Virus record (IMG/VR): IMGVR_UViG_3300032782_000001
Coordinates: 1-64,000 of that record
Length of the DNA stretch: 64,000 bases
Direction: 5' to 3' (one strand)
Both the position numbers and the translations under genes were made by a program. Of the stretch, positions 19,225 through 33,374 are shown in pieces; the first letter of the stretch is position 1; each line of letters begins with the position of its first letter. The notes under the pieces were generated by a model. That model was not told where the DNA came from. It made no database searches and worked only from the letters and a program-made list of their open reading frames with translations.

Positions 19225-19428
19225 TCAGGACTCCATAGTATCTACGACGATTTCCAAGTTCCTGGCGATCTGTAGCGCTTCGCTGTCAGTGTCGCACCTG
19301 ACAACTACTTCACCTCCCCATGGTGAATCACTCATACTCTGGACCTTCATAGGAATGAACTGCGGCTTCCCAGATCCAGGTATCCTTACGACTGCGTAGA
19401 ATCCTACTTCTTGATCGGAATTTTTCAA
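19225..19428 (-). CDS. VMES-tag protein
   Basis: ends IVVDTMES. Confidence 0.75.
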   Translation of the reverse strand: MKNSDQEVGFYAVVRIPGSGKPQFIPMKVQSMSDSPWGGEVVVRCDTDSEALQIARNLEIVVDTMES

Positions 19429-19628
19429 GATTCCATGACCAAGAAGACCAAGAATTCTTCCTTGGTCATCTTTAGAGAGACGCTCTGACGATAAAGAGGA
19501 ATTCCCATCCCCTCATGTTCAGAACACCGGCTTTGAAAAGGGAACCCGGCAACGCCGCGGTAGAAGTGGGTCCCATCACGTCCGCATATGACGCATTGGC
19601 ACATTTCTTCATCAGTTAGTGTGCTCAT
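19425..19628 (-). CDS. VMES-tag protein, Zn-module type
   Basis: ends EEFLVFLVMES. Confidence 0.8.
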   Translation of the reverse strand: MSTLTDEEMCQCVICGRDGTHFYRGVAGFPFQSRCSEHEGMGIPLYRQSVSLKMTKEEFLVFLVMES

Positions 19629-20300: not shown

Positions 20301-20846
20301 TCAAGATTCGTGGACTTCACGCACGGGATCTTGCTTGTAGATGACCTCGGCCCACCCCTCACCGAGGTAGATCTGACCGTGACCGTCTTCTTCCGTTCCC
20401 TCGCAGAGGGGACACGGGAGGTGTTCGTCCGCGTCCTCACACCCCTCCCAAGAACAAGCAGTCTCGCCAGAACTTGTGAAGTGTGCCACGCGATACCACT
20501 TCCCGTCCTCGTCTTCGATGACTTCAGGTGGAAGACCCCAAGAGCAATCTTGGACGATGGTCCGATATGACACATCGTAGAAATCCGGATAATCCCGCTT
20601 GGCGAGATAATCCGGGATTCCTTCGAACCAGAAAATGTACTGAGCCTGTCCACTCACCGTGTGATTGTTCGGGTCTGACGGGGTGCTGGTCTCGATGACC
20701 ACCCAAGGCTCGTCTTCGAGCTCTCCGCCCGTCAGACCGAAGACTTGCTCCACCCGCTCACGCTCAATGGCTGCGTCTTGGGCCTGGCGCTTACGCTCCA
20801 GTTCCGCCTCGTGATCCTCCACAGCCTTCAAATCCAGCTGCTCCAT
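20301..20846 (-). CDS. VMES-tag protein
   Basis: cassette-led; ends VREVHES. Confidence 0.85.
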   Translation of the reverse strand: MEQLDLKAVEDHEAELERKRQAQDAAIERERVEQVFGLTGGELEDEPWVVIETSTPSDPNNHTVSGQAQYIFWFEGIPDYLAKRDYPDFYDVSYRTIVQDCSWGLPPEVIEDEDGKWYRVAHFTSSGETACSWEGCEDADEHLPCPLCEGTEEDGHGQIYLGEGWAEVIYKQDPVREVHES

Positions 20847-20888
20847 CGTCGTCACCTCCGCGATTGAATACGACGCCGACTGCTGAAT

Positions 20889-25414: not shown

Positions 25415-25597
25415 ATGATTCATTGTTTTGAAGGCTGTGACAAACCAGTCATTGCTGGATATTCCGCTCAGGTTAACGATAGCCAGAGGCGCTTCCAATT
25501 TGTGTGTGAAGACCACGAAAAGCGATTCTTTCCGTGGGATGGTTGGATAAAACTGACCGATGAAGAGCTATTGGTTTACGAAGTCATGACATCATGA
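25415..25597 (+). CDS. VMES-tag protein, Zn-module type
   Basis: ends EELLVYEVMTS. Confidence 0.8.
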   Translation: MIHCFEGCDKPVIAGYSAQVNDSQRRFQFVCEDHEKRFFPWDGWIKLTDEELLVYEVMTS

Positions 25598-25794
25598 CCA
25601 CCGTTATTCATTGCGAATACATGGAACCCGGAAAGTGTAAGCGACAGGCTAGAGTCGCTTATTGGGTTCCTTCTAGCAATGAAGTCTGGTTCAGGTGTAA
25701 TCGACACAAGCTCCATGTTCGGACTACGGAGACTTTATGGGCACGAAAAATTCCAATTTCGGAAGGAATTGTTCTTTCTGTCATGGAGTCGTGA
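25594..25794 (+). CDS. VMES-tag protein, Zn-module type
   Basis: ends IVLSVMES. Confidence 0.8.
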   Translation: MTTVIHCEYMEPGKCKRQARVAYWVPSSNEVWFRCNRHKLHVRTTETLWARKIPISEGIVLSVMES

Positions 25795-25845: not shown

Positions 25846-25887
25846 GCAAATTCGCCGCTGCTCCGCGTATCGGGCAGTGGAGGTGAC
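25846..25887 (+). promoter_or_regulatory. promoter/RBS cassette
   Basis: CGCAAATTC-N12-CGTAT-N8-GGAGGTGAC. Confidence 0.8.
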
Positions 25888-25891
25888 GCGA

Positions 25892-27001
25892 ATGCTCACG
25901 AACATCAACGAGATCGATCAAGAGACGCTCATGCGGGTTCTCCGCTTCACGATCAAGTCGGGGGGCAATCTCATGACCTTCGGGCCGGCCGGCATCGGCA
26001 AGACCGAGATGGCCATGCAGGCCTGCAAGGAGGAGGGTTACAGGTTCGTCTATCTGAACCTGTCCGTCCTCGAGGCTCCGGACATGGTGGGCCTGCCGCA
26101 GGTCCAGGATGGCAAGACGAGCTATGCTCCGCCGGAGACCATCCCGCTGCGCGACGACAACCAGAAGAAGGTGGTGCTGCTCGTGGATGAGGTCGACAAG
26201 GCCAAGCCCGAGCTGCAGAACCCCTGCCTCGAGCTCTTCCAGTTCCGCGCCATGAACGGTCGCGAGATGAACATCCACAGCGTCATCGCGACGGGCAACC
26301 TGCCCGACGAGGGCGCCTTCTCGCAGCCCGTCAGCCACGCGCTCACGAACCGGTGCCTCGTGTTCAGGGTCACTCACGCCTTCGATCCGTGGCTGCAGTG
26401 GGCGACCGGCCCCGCGGCGGTCCATCCTCTCATCGTGGGCTTCCTCAGCAAGAACCCGGAGTACCTGCTCATGCCGGATGCCTCGGGTGACACCACGGCT
26501 TACTGCCATCCGAGCCCTCGCCAGTGGACCCTCGCCGCGAAGGACCTGGAGCACACGTCGACGGCGGACCACATCGACTTCCAGACGCTCCTCATCGCGG
26601 GTCGCGTCGGGACGGCGGCCGCCGTCAAGTTCCGGGTCTGGCTGGAGCACTACCGCCACGTCGAGCCCCTCATCGAGGCGCTCGTCAAGAAGGGCGAGCA
26701 CCCGGACATCAAGAACATGGCGATCGACCGCCAGTTCGTTTGTGCCCTGAGCGCCGTGGGTGCCATCGCAGCCGAATGCCGCAAGACGCTCGCCCCTGGC
26801 AAGGACAAGGAAGAGCAGAAGAAGAAGACCCACAAGTACACGGAGAACGTCTTCACGTGGCTCGGGAAGCTCCCCTCGGAGTTCGTCATCGGGGCCGTCA
26901 AGACGGTCCTCAACATGAAGATGATCCAGGACTACGACCTCACGAAGATCGCTCCGTTCATGCAGGAGTACATGAAGGTCAGGCAGGCCTTCAAGGACTG
27001 A
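25892..27001 (+). CDS. MoxR-family AAA+ ATPase
   Basis: Walker A GPAGIGKT, Walker B LLVDE, sensor ATGN, Arg finger ALTNR. Confidence 0.88.
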   Translation: MLTNINEIDQETLMRVLRFTIKSGGNLMTFGPAGIGKTEMAMQACKEEGYRFVYLNLSVLEAPDMVGLPQVQDGKTSYAPPETIPLRDDNQKKVVLLVDEVDKAKPELQNPCLELFQFRAMNGREMNIHSVIATGNLPDEGAFSQPVSHALTNRCLVFRVTHAFDPWLQWATGPAAVHPLIVGFLSKNPEYLLMPDASGDTTAYCHPSPRQWTLAAKDLEHTSTADHIDFQTLLIAGRVGTAAAVKFRVWLEHYRHVEPLIEALVKKGEHPDIKNMAIDRQFVCALSAVGAIAAECRKTLAPGKDKEEQKKKTHKYTENVFTWLGKLPSEFVIGAVKTVLNMKMIQDYDLTKIAPFMQEYMKVRQAFKD

Positions 27002-27154
27002 TCTAGTATTCTCATAATCTTGACAAACCGAGTCTGCGTTAAGTTGATCTTATGGAAACAGAAGATCCTTCGCAGACTCGGATCGACGTCTAATTTCAGG
27101 AAGGGCAATCAAGGACTGGCACGGAATACTCCAGGTAAGATGAGATGTAATTGA

Positions 27155-27379
27155 ATGCCTCATGCCTGGATGAAGTATGAATCTGCAAACGCATACCGTC
27201 CTTACGGAGAAATGACTGGCACATACTTCCGTTTTGTATGTGCAAATTGTGGCCAAACCAAGATGCGAACAGATTCTCCCGAGTCTGATGAACGTCTTTG
27301 GACCAGCCCTTCTTGGTCCCCAAATGCCGTCCTGATGTCTTGCGAAGAAATCGTAGTTCTTGCAGTCATGGACTCTTGA
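27155..27379 (+). CDS. VMES-tag protein, HxW/CxxC type
   Basis: ends CEEIVVLAVMDS. Confidence 0.8.
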   Translation: MPHAWMKYESANAYRPYGEMTGTYFRFVCANCGQTKMRTDSPESDERLWTSPSWSPNAVLMSCEEIVVLAVMDS

Positions 27380-27465
27380 ATGGCAGACATTCAAGCCGTC
27401 AAGGATTGACTTAAATTCTGAGAGTCTCCACGTATGTAGGTTCCAGGCCTTAGGAGGGCCATCTA

Positions 27466-28428
27466 ATGACCAAGGCAGCCGCTAAGCAGTCCGTTGTCAC
27501 CAGCCTCAATCAACTCGAGCATCTCTTGAGGTCTCAGGAGACTTCCACTCCCATCACGGACGTAGCACTCTCGGCTGCCGCTGCCAGGGAGATCATCGAG
27601 AAGTGGGGCAAGGGAAACAGGCCTGTCTCGGATGTGACGGTCCAAAAATATAAGGGGGATATGGAGAACAACCGCTGGCGTTCCCATTCCCCCATCGGGT
27701 TCGGTGTGTTTCCGGACAAGATTCAGATTGGCGATGGGCAGCACAGGCTCATCGCACAGGACAAATCCTCCACCACGCAGGTCTACAGCGTTCAAGCATT
27801 CTCGGATAGTGACGAGTTCGAGGTCTTCGTCAAGACGGTGGACTCTGGGAAGCCCCGGAAGTTGTCGGATCTCTTCAGCATCCTCGAGACCTTCCCCCCG
27901 AATCAGTCCGCTCGGGCCCAGGCCATCACCAATTTCATGATGAAGTTTAGTGACATCAAGCTCACTACCGAATCTCAGCAGGACAAGGTGGACTATGCCA
28001 CTAGTCACCTCAAAGCCATCAGGTTCGCTTCCAGCCTGAACTCGAAGGAGTTCCAATCTCACGTCGCCGCGGCAATCGCCATCGCTCACAAGAAGCATCA
28101 GCGTGTTGTCGAAGCATTCGTGGATGCTGTTCACTCTGGTGTCGGCCTTGCAGCTGGTTCTCCAGCTCTCGTATTCAAGAATGCACTCAATGATTTGAAT
28201 TGTATCGCGCTGACCAACAAGAAGGAGGTCAAGCCTCGAGATCGTGCAATGGCAGTGACTTTGCGGGTGATTTACGACCACGCTCGCAACAAGAAGACTT
28301 CACACGTCAAAAAAACTCGCACGGACTCGAAGTACCTCCATGAGGTGATTACGTATTTCATCTCTTCGGATGTCGCTGACCAGTATCTGGCTCGGCATGC
28401 CAAAGAGGACACTTCTCACACTCCGTGA
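27466..28428 (+). CDS. ParB/Srx-fold protein with DGQHR motif
   Basis: IGDGQHRL. Confidence 0.7.
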   Translation: MTKAAAKQSVVTSLNQLEHLLRSQETSTPITDVALSAAAAREIIEKWGKGNRPVSDVTVQKYKGDMENNRWRSHSPIGFGVFPDKIQIGDGQHRLIAQDKSSTTQVYSVQAFSDSDEFEVFVKTVDSGKPRKLSDLFSILETFPPNQSARAQAITNFMMKFSDIKLTTESQQDKVDYATSHLKAIRFASSLNSKEFQSHVAAAIAIAHKKHQRVVEAFVDAVHSGVGLAAGSPALVFKNALNDLNCIALTNKKEVKPRDRAMAVTLRVIYDHARNKKTSHVKKTRTDSKYLHEVITYFISSDVADQYLARHAKEDTSHTP

Positions 28429-28435
28429 GGTATTG

Positions 28436-29365
28436 ATGGACATCAGGCATGTTCCGATTGAGGTCGACGACATCGTCGTCGACCATGACGTCATGATCCG
28501 GGATCGTTTGGATGAATCCTGGGTAAGGGAGCTCGCTGCCCTTTACGAAGATCGTCATCAGATCGATCCGATTCTTCTCATGAAAGACAAAGACGGAATC
28601 ATCCGCTTGGTGCACGGATTCTATCGGGTGGCCGCGCTGAAAATGTGCGGCCATTCCGGTACAACTGCAGAGATCCGCGAAGGTTCAAAGGATCAAGCCA
28701 TTCTTGCTGCATGCAGGGTGGACCATCATGGGTTGAGGAGGACTATTCAAGAGCAAAAGAAGGCAGTATTTCGGGTGAAAGAATCAGCCGAAATGAAGAA
28801 TTCAAGTAATAGGGCCATCGGAATTTATTGTGGTATTCCGGAGTGGGCCGTCGTCAAAATTCTTTTGGGCGAGGAACCTATCCTTGGTCCCAGGGTTTGC
28901 CATGTTTCAGTTCCTGGCGAACTCCCTTTGAAGAAGAACTTGACTGCCCTCTACGCGAAAATCGACTCGGCTCTCCGAGCTAATCCGAGCATGAATAGCA
29001 CGGAAATCAGCAAACTCTTGAAGTGCAACAGGGCGCTCGTTGCGAAGAGGCGGATTGAGATCGGAGTTCCTCAGGCTAACTTTCCGGGAAAGGCAAAACC
29101 TGAAGCTCGAGCCAGTATCATTGAATTACTGAAAAATAACCCCAAAAGGACTCTGGCTTCTATTGCTGAAGAGGTGGGAGTAGCCCCGTCCACTGTCAGT
29201 GGGATTAGGGACAAGCTACTAAAGGAGAAGAAGGAACAAGACGAGAAAAAGAAGGAACAAGCCCCGGCTCCCTCTGATGAAATGCCTTCGGCTCCCTTCA
29301 GGAAGGGAGCCCAACCCGATCCTCGCCTTACGTTCCAACAGTATAAGGTACGTTCAGGATCTTGA
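28436..29365 (+). CDS. ParB-like N-terminal domain plus HTH motifs
   Basis: PILL...LVHGFYRVAA; HTH-like SNRAIG and TLASIAEEVGVAPSTV. Confidence 0.75.
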   Translation: MDIRHVPIEVDDIVVDHDVMIRDRLDESWVRELAALYEDRHQIDPILLMKDKDGIIRLVHGFYRVAALKMCGHSGTTAEIREGSKDQAILAACRVDHHGLRRTIQEQKKAVFRVKESAEMKNSSNRAIGIYCGIPEWAVVKILLGEEPILGPRVCHVSVPGELPLKKNLTALYAKIDSALRANPSMNSTEISKLLKCNRALVAKRRIEIGVPQANFPGKAKPEARASIIELLKNNPKRTLASIAEEVGVAPSTVSGIRDKLLKEKKEQDEKKKEQAPAPSDEMPSAPFRKGAQPDPRLTFQQYKVRSGS

Positions 29366-29578
29366 TTCAAGACTGGTTGCAAATCAATGTATATCCGAAG
29401 TTACCGTCGATGGACGGTTCAAGGACTGACGATCCCCTGAGGATCGCAAAGGAGTGGCGTTCGCACGTCACCTCCGCTCGCCTCGGAAGGTCTGGAATGG
29501 GCCAGATCTTCCGAGGCTGAGCCTTGTCGTGTAAGATCGTTCCGATTATGCACAGGAGATTGTCTCCTCGGTGATGCC

Positions 29579-29833
29579 TTGAAGGTCTTTAGGGAGAAGG
29601 ACCCGAAATCGGTCCAATGTCACCACGTCTACACCACCTTTGAAGTGGTACGGGAACAAGGACGATGTAAATATAAGGCATCCCGGTTCTTCATGTTGAT
29701 AGCGCTGGGGGCGTACTACGGATTTTGTAGGAAACATTGGAATGATGGTGAGAGATTGAATTCACCAGGAGAAACTCGGGCCACGGAGATCACCCGAGAC
29801 CAATACGTCGTCCATGAAATCATGGACTCTTGA
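29579..29833 (+). CDS. VMES-tag protein, Zn-module type
   Basis: ends YVVHEIMDS. Confidence 0.75.
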   Translation: MKVFREKDPKSVQCHHVYTTFEVVREQGRCKYKASRFFMLIALGAYYGFCRKHWNDGERLNSPGETRATEITRDQYVVHEIMDS

Positions 29834-29899
29834 AAGGCAATTTGGCGTCGATCCGCAAATTCAGCGATCCGACGCGTATCGATCTGTGGAGGTGACGAA

Positions 29900-31387
29900 A
29901 TGCAGATGTCCGATGTCTCCAGGCTGAAAGACCCGAAGCGGGTCTGCACGAAGGAGGACGGGTCTTACGACCACGCCCGTCTCGCCCTCTTGCAAAAGAA
30001 GGTTTCCGACTGCATGACGAAGATGTTCCGCAAGCCCGAGGGCGGCGGAAACCCCTTCCTCTACGCCCTCACCCTGCCCAAGCCGCACGAGCTCGCCATC
30101 GAGCTCCCCGGGCCCAATGGGAAGGACTTCCACACGGCTGCCACCGACGGCAAGAAGTTCTGGTGGCACCCGGACTTCCTCGAGAAGCTGGACTCGGAAG
30201 AGGTGCCCACGGTCATGGAGCACGAGGGTTATCACGTGATCCTCTTCCATCCGCAACGTGGCGTGGGGACCAACCCCCGCATCTTCAACTGGGCGATCGA
30301 CTACGTTGTCAACGCCATCATCGAGACCAATCACAAGCAGCTCAACCGCAAGGGCAAGCTTTGGGGCGGGAACCTCGGCGAGCCGCTCTCGTTCGCGGAT
30401 CTTCTCTCGTACATCGATGGAAATTCGGAGCTCCCGAAGGACAAGAATTCCATCTTCGTGGACGTCTCGCTTCACGGACGGAGTCCGGAGTCGATCTACG
30501 AAGAGATCATGGATCATTGGGACAAGAGTCCGCGCAAGTGCTCTCTCTGTACGTGCCTGTCCATCGATCCGAAGACTGGCAAGCCCATCCACGCCCTTCA
30601 CGGCAAGAGCCCAGTGCCGCCGGAGAAACCGCACGACCCCCACTGCGACGGGACCTGCTGTCCCAAGTGTGGCGTCAAGTCGGACCCGCTCGGGTCGATG
30701 GACGCTCACATCCCGGGCGCCCTGACGAAAGATGAGGTCATGGCGGATATCATGCGCGCCAGGGACCAGTCGACGGCCATGAGGGGCACCGTTCCCTCCG
30801 AAGTGGAAGATGCGCTCAAAGAGCTGATGAAGCCTACGCTGAAGTTCACGGACATCGTCAAGTCCTGCTTCATGCGCAAGATCCAGGATGCTGGGATGAA
30901 GAACGACTGGAAGCGCTGCCGACGCCGGTGGTTGGCCTCCAATCCCAAGCAGTATCTCCCGAGGCGCCACACTCATCGGCCCCGGTGGCTTGCGATGGTG
31001 GACACCAGCGGCTCCATGCAGGACGATGATCTCCTCTACGGAATCTCTCAGCTCAAGGTTCTGGGAGACAACACGGAAGGTTACGTCATCCCCTGCGACG
31101 CATCTCCGAAATGGGATGCCATGCAGAAGATCGACAAGGCCACGGACCTGCAGAGGACCAAGATCGTCGGGCGCGGAGGAACGGTCTTCGATCAGTTCTT
31201 CCAGGACTTCCCGAAGAAGATCGGGACGGACTTCGACGTGGTGGTCATCATCACGGACGGAGACTGCGGGACGATCCCCCTGCACCTCAAGCCGCCGTGC
31301 GATGTCGTCTGGGTCATCACCCGGACCATGAAGGAGTATAAGCCCAGCTTCGGACGCGTGGCCCCGCTCCGCCCCTCTCGGATGTGA
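29900..31387 (+). CDS. DUF2201-type putative metallopeptidase with VWA domain
   Basis: TAATDG, HExxH (HEGYH), MIDAS DTSGS, GGT, ITDG; cassette-led. Confidence 0.88.
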   Translation: MQMSDVSRLKDPKRVCTKEDGSYDHARLALLQKKVSDCMTKMFRKPEGGGNPFLYALTLPKPHELAIELPGPNGKDFHTAATDGKKFWWHPDFLEKLDSEEVPTVMEHEGYHVILFHPQRGVGTNPRIFNWAIDYVVNAIIETNHKQLNRKGKLWGGNLGEPLSFADLLSYIDGNSELPKDKNSIFVDVSLHGRSPESIYEEIMDHWDKSPRKCSLCTCLSIDPKTGKPIHALHGKSPVPPEKPHDPHCDGTCCPKCGVKSDPLGSMDAHIPGALTKDEVMADIMRARDQSTAMRGTVPSEVEDALKELMKPTLKFTDIVKSCFMRKIQDAGMKNDWKRCRRRWLASNPKQYLPRRHTHRPRWLAMVDTSGSMQDDDLLYGISQLKVLGDNTEGYVIPCDASPKWDAMQKIDKATDLQRTKIVGRGGTVFDQFFQDFPKKIGTDFDVVVIITDGDCGTIPLHLKPPCDVVWVITRTMKEYKPSFGRVAPLRPSRM

Positions 31388-31444: not shown

Positions 31445-31741
31445 ATGGACGACGAAGAGGACTACAACTCGCAGCCTCCGCGTAATTTCCGTCAGCGTCT
31501 ATCGATGAAGATCGGTGCCTGGTCAGATGGGATGGACGGGATTCGGACTCGAATCTATCATTTCGAGTCTGGCTGTTTTCATAGACTGCCTTTGCCATCC
31601 AGGGCTGTAAGGTGGTTTCAGAACCTTCTCGTCCGAATTTCATTTGCAGTAGATGACATCTGCCCGGAGTGCCAATGTTCTCCGGGTCATTCACGCGAAT
31701 GTTCGAAATACTGCCCTGTCAAGTACGTGATGGAATCTTGA
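31445..31741 (+). CDS. VMES-tag protein
   Basis: ends CPVKYVMES. Confidence 0.75.
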   Translation: MDDEEDYNSQPPRNFRQRLSMKIGAWSDGMDGIRTRIYHFESGCFHRLPLPSRAVRWFQNLLVRISFAVDDICPECQCSPGHSRECSKYCPVKYVMES

Positions 31742-33017: not shown

Positions 33018-33374
33018 ATGGCTCGTACGCATTCCGATCAGGCGAAGATGGCGGTGGTTCTCGACGTGATGGAGGTGTCGGATGCCTTGAAGGGCAAGTC
33101 CTTCTCCATCACCGGCCATCTCGGTCGTCCGCGCCCCGAAATCGTGGAGATCATCACGAGGGCGGGCGGTCGTTTCGAGGAGAGGCCCAAGAACCTCTGG
33201 GGTAAGGATGCCTATCTGGTCACCAACGCCGACTGGACGAAGAATTCCATCAAGGGGAAGGTCTCGTCCAAGTTCGATGAGGCCAGGCGCAACGGCATCA
33301 AGATCATCTCGGAGGACGAGCTCTACAAGATGATCATCGACAACGACCCCAACATGAAGGACGAAGCATCGTGA
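33018..33374 (+). CDS. stand-alone BRCT-domain protein
   Basis: GKSFSITG...GG...YLV...SSK..A...GIKIISEDEL, LigA-type BRCT pattern. Confidence 0.85.
   Translation: MARTHSDQAKMAVVLDVMEVSDALKGKSFSITGHLGRPRPEIVEIITRAGGRFEERPKNLWGKDAYLVTNADWTKNSIKGKVSSKFDEARRNGIKIISEDELYKMIIDNDPNMKDEAS

What the first reader, a model, noticed from the sequence alone, without database searches (positions are those of the whole stretch)
25846..31387. MoxR AAA+ ATPase plus metallopeptidase/VWA protein as candidate receptor machine for the tag
Seen: a MoxR-type ATPase (25892-27001) and a HExxH plus MIDAS (DTSGS) VWA protein (29900-31387), each with a consensus copy of the promoter cassette and flanked by tagged genes. 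Established: MoxR ATPases work with VWA partners (RavA-ViaA, CbbQ-CbbO), and MIDAS sites bind ligands via an acidic residue. Inference: the penultimate E/D or terminal carboxylate of the tag could complete the MIDAS, delivering tagged proteins or their bound targets to an unfoldase/peptidase. This pair is also common in phages without any known tag, so the link is a hypothesis.
Basis: partly seen in the sequence, partly recalled or inferred. Interest (0 to 1): 0.75.

Follow-up and report, generated by a model that had tools for sequence, protein, structure and literature searches.

The report
Phage MoxR–VWA pair, tag link unproven
The two genes are a real AAA+ ATPase and a zinc-peptidase/VWA partner of a kind already known from N4-like and jumbo phages, but the pair is older and more widespread than the striking C-terminal "VMES" tag around it, so nothing yet shows that it reads that tag.

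Summary
Window 25892-27001 encodes a MoxR-like AAA+ ATPase (AAA_5, phrog_1297; nearest folds NorQ and CbbQ). Window 29900-31387 encodes a DUF2201 protein: HExxH zincin, CxxC…CxxC ribbon, and a VWA domain with a complete, invariant MIDAS. Each gene has its own promoter/SD cassette, and C-terminally tagged genes lie on both sides.

The window is the first 64 kb of a 436-kb wetland megaphage with terminal repeats. Both the tag (…[VI]-x-x-[VI]-[MH]-x-S-stop) and the cassette are far above chance.

The receptor idea is not supported:
- The pair is a distant relative of N4 gp24/gp25, which are core middle genes of tag-less phages.
- Three tag-less megaphages (one 96% complete) keep both genes, HExxH and MIDAS.
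- The penultimate tag residue is acidic in only 51-69% of tags. The conserved positions are hydrophobic, plus the terminal Ser.
- Flanking by tagged genes carries no information, because about 13 of 21 genes in this block are tagged.
- A complex prediction gave no verdict.

The idea is not refuted either:
- All five complete tag-bearing genomes keep the pair.
- Their VWA proteins alone carry the zinc-ribbon insert.

Best reading: an ordinary phage remodelling and protease module. Its link to the tag remains an open, testable long shot.

The parts
25848..25891 (+). Promoter/SD cassette in front of the ATPase gene (AAATTC, 12-nt spacer, CGTAT, 7 nt, TGGAGGTGACG, ATG).
   Evidence: Cassette-like sequence also precedes MoxR orthologues in tag-bearing relatives.
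25892..27001 (+). MoxR-like AAA+ ATPase, 369 aa. Motifs: Walker A GPAGIGKT, Walker B LLVDEVDK, sensor-1 N136, R154, and sensor-2 R210 in SPRxW. It has an extra helical C-terminal part of about 100 aa. It carries no tag (ends ...QAFKD).
   Evidence: Pfam AAA_5 and phrog_1297. Alignment A2. AlphaFold model pLDDT 79. The best-superposing solved chains are NorQ (TM by target 0.57-0.61) and CbbQ2 (0.55).
25594..25794 (+). Small tagged ORF (66 aa, Cys/His-rich, ends ...IVLSVMES) directly upstream of the ATPase cassette.
27155..27379 (+). Small tagged ORF (74 aa, ends ...VVLAVMDS) downstream of the ATPase.
27466..28428 (+). Untagged 320-aa ORF (phrog_5931, function unknown) with its own cassette-like site at 27413. 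It is an insertion between the pair that was not found in the relatives' loci.
28370..29365 (+). Untagged 331-aa ORF with a weak ParB-like N-terminal match (phrog_1033) and a winged-helix HTH. It was also not found in the relatives' loci.
29579..29833 (+). Small tagged ORF (84 aa, ends ...VVHEIMDS) upstream of the VWA gene's cassette.
29857..29899 (+). Promoter/SD cassette in front of the VWA gene.
   Evidence: Conserved in front of VWA orthologues of G001, G002, L073, L076 and L085.
29900..30529 (+). N-terminal putative zincin peptidase domain of the DUF2201 protein (residues 1-210). H108, E109, H112, H117 and D134 are invariant, including in the N4-like homologue.
   Evidence: Pfam DUF2201_N E 2.5e-21. 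Alignments A1 and A3. Model pLDDT mostly above 88 here. The fold was not matched separately.
30530..30685 (+). CxxC…CxxC zinc-ribbon insert (C214, C217, C254, C257) with a variable, often G/Q-rich loop. It is present in every tag-clade homologue and absent from tag-less relatives.
   Evidence: The loop has low confidence in the model.
30971..31387 (+). VWA domain (residues 358-495) with a complete MIDAS (D368-T-S370-G-S372, T428, D453) and a conserved C-terminal tail, FGRVAPLR. It carries no tag.
   Evidence: Pfam DUF2201. VIA-align Z 10-12 to integrin I, CLCA1, Rea1-MIDAS and NorD VWA domains. Invariant columns.
31445..31741 (+). Tagged ORF (ends ...VKYVMES) downstream of the VWA gene.

Best explanation
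The pair is the megaphage version of the N4 gp24/gp25-type module. It consists of a MoxR-like AAA+ ATPase, presumably a hexamer, and a DUF2201 adaptor that combines a zincin peptidase, a zinc ribbon and a MIDAS-bearing VWA domain.

By analogy with CbbQ-CbbO, NorQ-NorD, RavA-ViaA and Rea1, the inferred mechanism has three steps:
- The VWA domain grips an acidic group on a target protein through its Mg2+ site.
- The ATPase ring, docked to the adaptor, pulls on or remodels that target.
- The HExxH domain may then cut it.

The target is most likely one conserved phage or host protein complex handled in the early-to-middle phase of infection. It is probably not the hundred-odd fast-evolving tagged proteins.

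Shown: domain make-up, motif conservation, ancestral operon linkage, distribution, and own cassette promoters. Inferred: hexamer, adaptor docking, MIDAS-ligand grip, proteolysis, and timing.
For: Identity:
- Pfam, PHROG and fold results for both proteins.
- Invariant Walker, sensor, HExxH and MIDAS residues.

Linkage:
- The ATPase gene ends directly before the VWA gene in the tag-less relatives G011, G012 and G014.
- It lies 0.6-4 kb upstream in nine tag-clade loci.

Breadth:
- Homologues occur in N4-like phages (JWAlpha gp33/gp36, annotated as like N4 gp24/gp25) and in rV5-like phages.
- gp24 and gp25 are among the 14 core genes of N4-like phages and are middle transcripts (PMC4193335).
- A MoxR-vWA pair with an N-terminal metallopeptidase has been described in jumbo phages (PMC7824862).
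- MoxR and VWA are by far the best-conserved proteins between this phage and the tag-less 409-kb phage G011 (E 2e-96 and 3e-110), and only 41 ORFs are shared at all.

Mechanism precedent:
- CbbO MIDAS mutants lose substrate sensing, and an acidic Rubisco residue is needed (PMC4660213).

Timing:
- The cassettes are confined to the genome ends, next to the terminal repeat.
Against: - No substrate is identified, and no expression data exist (no RNA run was listed).
- Calling the cassette region early is an inference from its position.
- Within the tag clade the pair has been pulled apart by tagged genes, each gene has gained its own cassette, and the VWA protein has gained a zinc ribbon. The module did change when the tag arose, so it could have acquired a new clientele.
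- The peptidase fold was not verified by structure comparison.
Confidence: 0.65

Rival explanations
1. One reading: the pair is the receptor and processing machine for the C-terminal tag. The MIDAS Mg2+ is completed by the tag's penultimate E/D or by its terminal carboxylate, and tagged proteins (or what they hold) are handed to the ATPase and peptidase.
For: - All five complete tag-bearing genomes (G000, G001, G002, G006, G007) and every tag-bearing contig that covers the region keep both genes. The one exception is L071, where no ATPase match lies within 10 kb of the VWA gene.
- The pair sits inside tagged-gene arrays in the relatives too and shares their cassette promoter.
- The VWA proteins of tag-bearing phages, and only those, carry the CxxC…CxxC insert.
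- The phage genome has no ClpP, Lon or PDZ_2 match that could offer a classical tag reader.
- A C-terminal carboxylate can complete a MIDAS (C3b with factor B; from my own knowledge).
Against: - The pair, with invariant HExxH and MIDAS, exists in tag-less megaphages. G011 is 96% complete, has 0 tag matches and has no enriched C-terminal motif of any kind; G012 and G014 also lack the tag. N4-like phages have the pair too. MIDAS is therefore ancestral, not an adaptation to the tag.
- The penultimate residue is E/D in only 69%, 51% and 60% of tags in G000, G001 and G002. K, N, Q, R and S are tolerated.
- The best-conserved tag positions are V/I at -7 and -4, M/H at -3 and S at -1. This looks like the face of an amphipathic helix fitting a groove rather than a metal contact.
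- Co-presence within one clade is a single evolutionary event. 144 other ORFs show the same pattern against G011.
Confidence: 0.12
2. Virion-assembly chaperone and protease, as proposed for the MoxR-vWA-metallopeptidase pair of jumbo phages and for the MoxR/VWA pair of Acidianus two-tailed virus. On this reading the module matures or processes structural proteins.
For: - The published proposal (PMC7824862).
- The pair is conserved as strongly as, or more strongly than, structural genes across very divergent megaphages.
Against: - Here the genes lie far from the large structural block (about 180-400 kb) and sit in the cassette-driven terminal region among small accessory genes.
- In N4 the homologues are middle, not late, transcripts.
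- No prohead or structural neighbours were seen. The conserved downstream neighbour is a BRCT-domain protein.
Confidence: 0.15
3. The tag is read by something else, and the pair is a bystander. Candidates are a host factor or another clade-specific phage protein, for example the Cdc48/VAT-like classical AAA+ ATPase at genome 261,100-262,605.
For: - That ATPase matches Cdc48, p97 and VAT unfoldases at E 2.5e-48.
- It has full-length orthologues (56-61% identity) in all four other complete tag-bearing genomes and in the tag-bearing fragment G003.
- Tag-less genomes give only weak partial AAA-domain hits.
- A cluster of tagged ORFs lies at 260-270 kb.
- Tagged proteins are poorly conserved ORFans, as expected of host-directed accessory proteins that may use a host hub.
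Against: - The Cdc48-like gene was not found in the incomplete tag-bearing contigs G008, G009, G010 and G013.
- The pattern rests on the same single-clade confounding.
- No binding evidence of any kind exists.
- The host is unknown. Binned relatives carry conflicting labels, a Lentisphaeria MAG and a Methylobacter MAG.
Confidence: 0.3

Closest known systems
Phage N4 gp24 (ATPase) / gp25 (vWFA, DUF2201) and their homologues in N4-like and rV5-like phages (phrog_1297 / phrog_1314)
   Same: - Same two families.
- Same gene order, ATPase upstream of the HExxH + VWA protein.
- Both lie in a pre-late gene region.
- HExxH, H117, D134 and all MIDAS residues are shared.
   Different: - Only about 24% identity.
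- The megaphage protein is about 110 aa longer and has a CxxC…CxxC insert.
- The two genes are separated and each has its own promoter cassette.
- The function of the N4 pair is itself unknown.
MoxR-vWA pair with an N-terminal metallopeptidase in group 2.2 jumbo phages (Iyer et al. 2021, PMC7824862)
   Same: The same three-part architecture was described as a chaperone/co-chaperone pair.
   Different: That proposal (virion assembly and processing) is untested. I did not compare sequences with the accessions named there. Here the genomic setting is the terminal accessory-gene region.
CbbQ-CbbO, NorQ-NorD and RavA-ViaA (cellular MoxR/VWA remodelling systems)
   Same: - The ATPase fold is closest to NorQ and CbbQ.
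- The VWA domain has a complete MIDAS.
- The two genes are linked in an operon in the outgroups.
- The MIDAS-to-acidic-residue mechanism is shown for CbbO.
   Different: - The adaptors share no similarity outside the VWA domain.
- None of the cellular adaptors has the zincin domain.
- The substrates (Rubisco, NO reductase, respiratory complexes) are irrelevant here.
CLCA1-type proteins (zincin metalloprotease fused to a MIDAS VWA domain)
   Same: The CLCA1 VWA domain is among the best structural matches (Z 12.1). The general protease-plus-VWA layout is alike (the layout is from my own knowledge).
   Different: CLCA1 is a eukaryotic secreted protein with no AAA+ partner. This is an analogy of architecture only.

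Membership tests
MoxR-like AAA+ ATPases (AAA_5 / CbbQ-NorQ-GvpN group) | AAA+ core with Walker A, Walker B, sensor 1, Arg finger and sensor 2 | tested here: met
   GxAGxGKT, hhhhDExDK, N136, R154 and R210 are invariant in 11 orthologues. Pfam AAA_5 scores 30.3 bits against a cut-off of 22.
MoxR-like AAA+ ATPases (AAA_5 / CbbQ-NorQ-GvpN group) | Fold closest to solved MoxR-family members, with a helix-2 insert and a pre-sensor-1 hairpin | tested here: inconclusive
   NorQ and CbbQ2 superpose best (TM by target 0.55-0.61, rmsd about 6 Å). However, dynein, RuvB and RFC have similar Foldseek E-values. The presumed helix-2 insert (residues 60-80) has pLDDT about 40. Pfam AAA_3 (MoxR proper) did not match.
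MoxR-like AAA+ ATPases (AAA_5 / CbbQ-NorQ-GvpN group) | Genomic linkage to a VWA-domain partner | tested here: met
   Directly adjacent in G011, G012 and G014, and within 0.6-4 kb in nine tag-clade loci.
DUF2201 (putative metallopeptidase + VWA-like) proteins | Both Pfam domains over their cut-offs, in order | tested here: met
   PF13203 scores 77 bits (cut-off 23.2) and PF09967 scores 39.2 bits (cut-off 26.4). phrog_1314 E 4.6e-53.
DUF2201 (putative metallopeptidase + VWA-like) proteins | Zincin active site (HExxH plus a third ligand) in a peptidase fold | tested here: inconclusive
   H108-E109-x-x-H112, H117 and D134 are invariant. The fold searches were dominated by the VWA domain, so no peptidase match was obtained. 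No catalysis is shown.
VWA domains with MIDAS | DxSxS … T … D motif on a VWA (Rossmann-like) fold | tested here: met
   D368, S370, S372, T428 and D453 are invariant. Z is 10-12 to integrin I, CLCA1, Rea1 and NorD VWA domains.
   The pair is present in all tag-bearing genomes, but also in the tag-less G011 (96% complete), G012, G014 and N4-like phages.
   E/D at -2 occurs in 69% (G000), 51% (G001) and 60% (G002) of tags, and is highly variable in G009. The terminal carboxylate alternative cannot be tested with these tools.
   The single complex prediction returned 'no answer'. That is not evidence either way.

The most novel reading that the evidence does not exclude
When the tag arose in this megaphage clade, the old gp24/gp25-type module was re-purposed. 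Its VWA/zincin adaptor gained a clade-specific zinc-ribbon insert, and the module now recognises the C-terminal helix or carboxylate of over 100 accessory proteins per genome. It would then dock, remodel or remove them on schedule. That would be a virus-encoded, peptide-addressed protein-handling system.
Probability: 0.1. Interest if true: 0.8.

Novelty: new member of a known kind. Interest (0 to 1): 0.3.

Why it matters
The gp24/gp25-type ATPase/VWA-peptidase pair is a core module of several large groups of lytic phages, and its function is unknown. It is also the most conserved protein pair found here between very divergent megaphages. Finding its substrate would matter for phage biology in general.

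The surrounding tag is the truly unusual feature of this genome. It is a conserved 12-residue C-terminal peptide on roughly a fifth of the ORFs. If the pair turned out to read that tag, it would define a new viral protein-addressing system.

The present evidence says the two features are neighbours, not demonstrated partners. The pair should not be taken as the tag's explanation.

Tried and rejected
- Complex prediction: the VWA protein (41-row alignment) plus Mg plus Zn plus a 67-aa tagged protein (window 19428-19628, minus strand) scored 0.00. The tool's verdict was 'no answer', so this is not evidence for or against binding.
- Expression data: no RNA run was listed for the VWA gene. Only two wetland DNA runs hold the region, so cassette timing stays inferred.
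- Classical C-terminal tag readers: the phage genome has no match to ClpP, PDZ_2 or Lon_C.
- Defence families: PADLOC gave only marginal AAA hits, and NCBIfam gave nothing useful.
- Nature of tagged proteins: the ten largest tagged proteins of the window have no Pfam match.
- Host inference: two MAG-binned relatives carry conflicting labels, Lentisphaeria and Methylobacter, so this was dropped.
- Literature: 'VMES' with 'phage' returned nothing relevant, and DUF2201 has almost no literature.
- Phyletic profiling against the tag-less G011: 144 ORFs share the pattern 'in G001 and G002 but not in G011', which is too many to single out a receptor.
- A DNA-level origin of the tag was considered and rejected. 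Ser uses both TCN and AGY codons, Val uses all four codons, and the tag persists across relatives from about 40% to 65% GC.
Full report
**Setting**

The window is the first 64 kb of a 436,316-bp IMG/VR virus record with direct terminal repeats. The record was recovered from a wetland metagenome.

Two features dominate this end of the genome.

- **The C-terminal tag.**
  - About 75 stop-to-stop ORFs in the window, and 120-150 in the genome, end in the motif ...[ED]-E-x-[ILV]-[VI]-x-x-[VI]-[MH]-x-S-stop. The endings VMES, VMDS and IMES occur 58, 16 and 12 times.
  - The motif is selected at the protein level. Ser is written with both TCN and AGY codons, and Val with all four codons.
  - The tag recurs in relatives with 40%, 50%, 60% and 65% G+C.
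  - The strict DNA form occurs 64 times in the genome, against 0 for the reversed control.
- **The promoter/SD cassette.**
  - Its form is (C)G(C/T)-AA(A/G)T(T/C)C, about 12 nt, CGTA(T/C), about 7 nt, (T)GGAGGTGACG, ATG.
  - Roughly 60 full copies are confined to 429.8-436.3 kb and 0-45 kb, on both sides of the terminal repeat.

**The observation**

- *ATPase.*
  - The ORF is 25877-27001. Its real start is the ATG at 25892, because all orthologues begin MLT and the SD lies 5 nt upstream.
  - It matches Pfam AAA_5 above the cut-off and phrog_1297 at E 4e-49.
- *VWA protein.*
  - The ORF 29900-31387 matches DUF2201_N (E 2.5e-21), DUF2201 (E 9e-10) and phrog_1314 (E 5e-53). That PHROG is mislabelled 'HNH endonuclease'.
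- *Cassettes.* Consensus copies start at 25848 and 29857.
- *Tagged neighbours.* They lie at 25594-25794, 27155-27379, 29579-29833 and 31445-31741.

Neither the flanking nor the cassette distinguishes the pair. In the plus-strand block from 23 to 36 kb, about 13 of 21 genes are tagged and about a third have their own cassette. Neither protein of the pair is itself tagged.

**What the two proteins are**

*ATPase.*

- Eleven orthologues share an intact Walker A, Walker B, sensor 1, a conserved Arg154 and a sensor-2 arginine.
- The AlphaFold model has pLDDT 79.
- It superposes best on NorQ (TM by target 0.57-0.61) and CbbQ2 (0.55). Both are MoxR-family partners of the VWA proteins NorD and CbbO.
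- Other AAA+ folds reach similar Foldseek E-values, so the MoxR assignment is supported rather than proven.

*VWA partner.* The model has pLDDT 84. The protein has four parts:

- A helical N-terminal domain in which H108-E109-x-x-H112, H117 and D134 are invariant, even in the N4-like homologue.
- A CxxC…CxxC element (C214, C217, C254, C257) with a variable, often G/Q-rich loop.
- A helical linker.
- A C-terminal VWA fold, residues 358-495.
  - It matches integrin I, CLCA1, Rea1-MIDAS and NorD VWA domains at Z 10-12.
  - Its MIDAS is complete and invariant: D368, S370, S372, T428 and D453.

I could not confirm the peptidase fold by structure comparison, because the VWA domain dominated both searches.

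**Relatives and distribution**

- Among cultured phages only distant homologues exist, at 25% identity or less. They are in N4-like and rV5-like phages.
- In Achromobacter phage JWAlpha the ATPase (gp33) and the DUF2201 protein (gp36) are annotated as similar to N4 gp24 and gp25.
- gp24 and gp25 are two of the 14 core genes of N4-like phages and are middle transcripts (PMC4193335).
- Iyer et al. described a MoxR-vWA pair with an N-terminal metallopeptidase in jumbo phages. They proposed a role in virion assembly (PMC7824862).
- In uncultured data the VWA protein has several hundred close relatives, 47-73% identical, many on contigs of 200-400 kb.

**Testing the link to the tag by co-occurrence**

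I fetched or scanned 14 related virus records. Counts below are matches to the strict tag pattern.

| Record | Tag matches | Note |
|---|---|---|
| G000 | 64 | own genome, complete |
| G001 | 26 | complete |
| G002 | 18 | complete |
| G013 | 9 | 45% complete |
| G008 | 7 | 44% complete |
| G006 | 6 | complete |
| G007 | 4 | complete |
| G003 | 4 | 30% complete fragment |
| G009, G010 | 1 each | incomplete |
| G011 | 0 | 409 kb, 96% complete |
| G012, G014, G015 | 0 | tag-less |

- G009 does have the tag, mostly with His in place of Met at -3, which the strict pattern misses.
- G011 has no enriched C-terminal motif of any kind.
- The tag-less G011, G012 and G014 all encode both proteins, with VWA 33-38% identical and MoxR up to 41% identical. 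They keep HExxH and DxSxS, and the two genes are directly adjacent.
- MoxR and VWA are by far the best-conserved proteins between G000 and G011 (E 2e-96 and 3e-110). Only 41 ORFs are shared at all.

The pair is therefore older and more widespread than the tag, and its MIDAS is ancestral. In the other direction, all five complete tag-bearing genomes keep the pair. This co-presence is a single phylogenetic event: 144 other ORFs are also present in G001 and G002 but absent from G011.

**What the tag itself says**

The regex that defined the tags left position -2 free. At that position E/D occurs in 69% of tags in G000, 51% in G001 and 60% in G002. N, K, Q, S, T and R are tolerated.

The most conserved positions are:

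- V/I at -7 and -4
- I/L/V at -8
- M (or H) at -3
- S at -1
- An [ST]-x-[ED]-E start that looks like a helix cap

Cys is enriched at -12. This pattern suggests a short amphipathic helix that fits a groove. It argues against the penultimate acid as an obligatory metal ligand. It does not exclude the terminal carboxylate.

Tagged ORFs are short (median 103 aa) and poorly conserved. Only 7-9% have a homologue in G001 or G002, against 38-45% of untagged ORFs. The ten largest in the window have no Pfam match.

**What does change with the tag**

- In tag-bearing phages the two genes are separated by 0.6-4 kb of small, often tagged genes.
- Each of the two genes has its own cassette.
- Every tag-clade VWA protein carries the CxxC…CxxC insert. 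This holds for 41 of 41 sequences in alignment A1 and for the tag-bearing loci examined. G011, G012, G014 and JWAlpha lack it.

It too rests on one evolutionary split.

**Other candidates for reading the tag**

- The phage has no ClpP, Lon_C or PDZ_2 match.
- It does encode two classical-clade AAA ATPases similar to the Cdc48, p97, VAT and Mpa unfoldases.
- The one at 313,359-314,855 is essentially private to this genome.
- The one at 261,100-262,605 has full-length orthologues (56-61% identity) in all four other complete tag-bearing genomes and in fragment G003. Tag-less genomes give only weak AAA-domain hits. It was not found in four incomplete tag-bearing contigs.
- By co-occurrence it is at least as good a candidate as the MoxR/VWA pair. 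A host factor is equally possible.

**Conclusion**

The pair is best explained as a gp24/gp25-type MoxR-like ATPase with a zincin-VWA adaptor. By analogy with CbbQO, NorQD, RavA-ViaA and Rea1, the VWA/MIDAS domain would grip an acidic group on a specific target, the ATPase ring would remodel it, and the peptidase might cut it. The cassette suggests that expression comes with the terminal-region genes.

The identity is shown. The mechanism and the timing are inferred. The receptor-for-the-tag reading is unsupported but not refuted; I put it at about 0.1.

As a finding, the pair is a new member of a known kind. The remarkable object in this window is the tag, not the pair.

Noticed in passing
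Relative G009 (IMGVR_UViG_3300032233_002382), about 34-58 kb and 259-266 kb; also window 20301-20855 (-), which ends VHES: Lineage-specific tag variant. In G009 most tags have His instead of Met at -3 ([ST]-C-[DE]-E-x-x-[VA]-x-x-[VI]-H-x-S) and a very variable -2. G002 has 24% His and G000 has 9%. Met and His codons are not one mutation apart, so this looks like a selected alternative. It offers a handle for covariation with a receptor.
   Followed up: partly
Window 30530-30685 (residues 211-262 of the VWA protein): A CxxC…CxxC zinc-ribbon-like insert with a variable G/Q-rich loop. It is present in all tag-clade VWA homologues and absent from tag-less relatives and from the N4-like homologue.
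   Followed up: partly
Window 1-45000 and genome 429,800-436,316: The promoter/SD cassette is confined to both sides of the terminal repeat (roughly 60 copies). Its AAATTC…CGTAT layout resembles ECF-sigma-type -35/-10 elements (from my own knowledge). It is conserved in front of orthologous genes in relatives with 40-55% G+C.
   Followed up: partly
Window 4517 (-), 17000 (-), 437 (-), 747 (-), 161 (-); genome 432434 (-): In several cassettes the spacer between the two promoter-like boxes is the reverse complement of the cassette's own SD region (…TTCGTCACCTCCGG … CCGGAGGTGACGAA…). This gives a long inverted repeat with CGTAT in the loop. It could be a DNA hairpin promoter or an SD-sequestering RNA hairpin. 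GATC often follows CGTAT.
   Followed up: no
Whole genome G000: Tagged ORFs (about 100-150, median 103 aa) are fast-evolving ORFans. Only 7-9% have a homologue in G001 or G002, against 38-45% of untagged ORFs. 37% of them end in an ATGA stop/start overlap, against 16% of untagged ORFs. Many small ones carry CxxC…CxxH/C patterns, and Cys is enriched at tag position -12.
   Followed up: partly
Genome 261,100-262,605 (-) and 313,359-314,855 (+): Two classical-clade AAA ATPases resembling the Cdc48, p97, VAT and Mpa unfoldases (E 2.5e-48 and 4.6e-87 to solved chains). The first is conserved full-length in all complete tag-bearing relatives. The second is nearly private to this phage.
   Followed up: partly
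Window 27466-29365: Two untagged ORFs lie between the ATPase and VWA genes only in this genome. One is phrog_5931 (function unknown). The other has a weak ParB-like N-terminal match plus a winged-helix HTH. No matches to either were found in the relatives' loci.
   Followed up: partly
Window 33018-33374 and relatives' loci L071-L085: A small BRCT-domain protein is a conserved downstream neighbour of the VWA gene across the tag clade (41-59% identity). A DUF6011 protein also recurs nearby in relatives.
   Followed up: no
G000 versus G011: MoxR and VWA (41% and 38% identity, full length) are much better conserved between these two megaphages than any structural or replication protein (mostly 22-36% over parts). 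This means either unusually strong constraint or horizontal exchange of the module.
   Followed up: no
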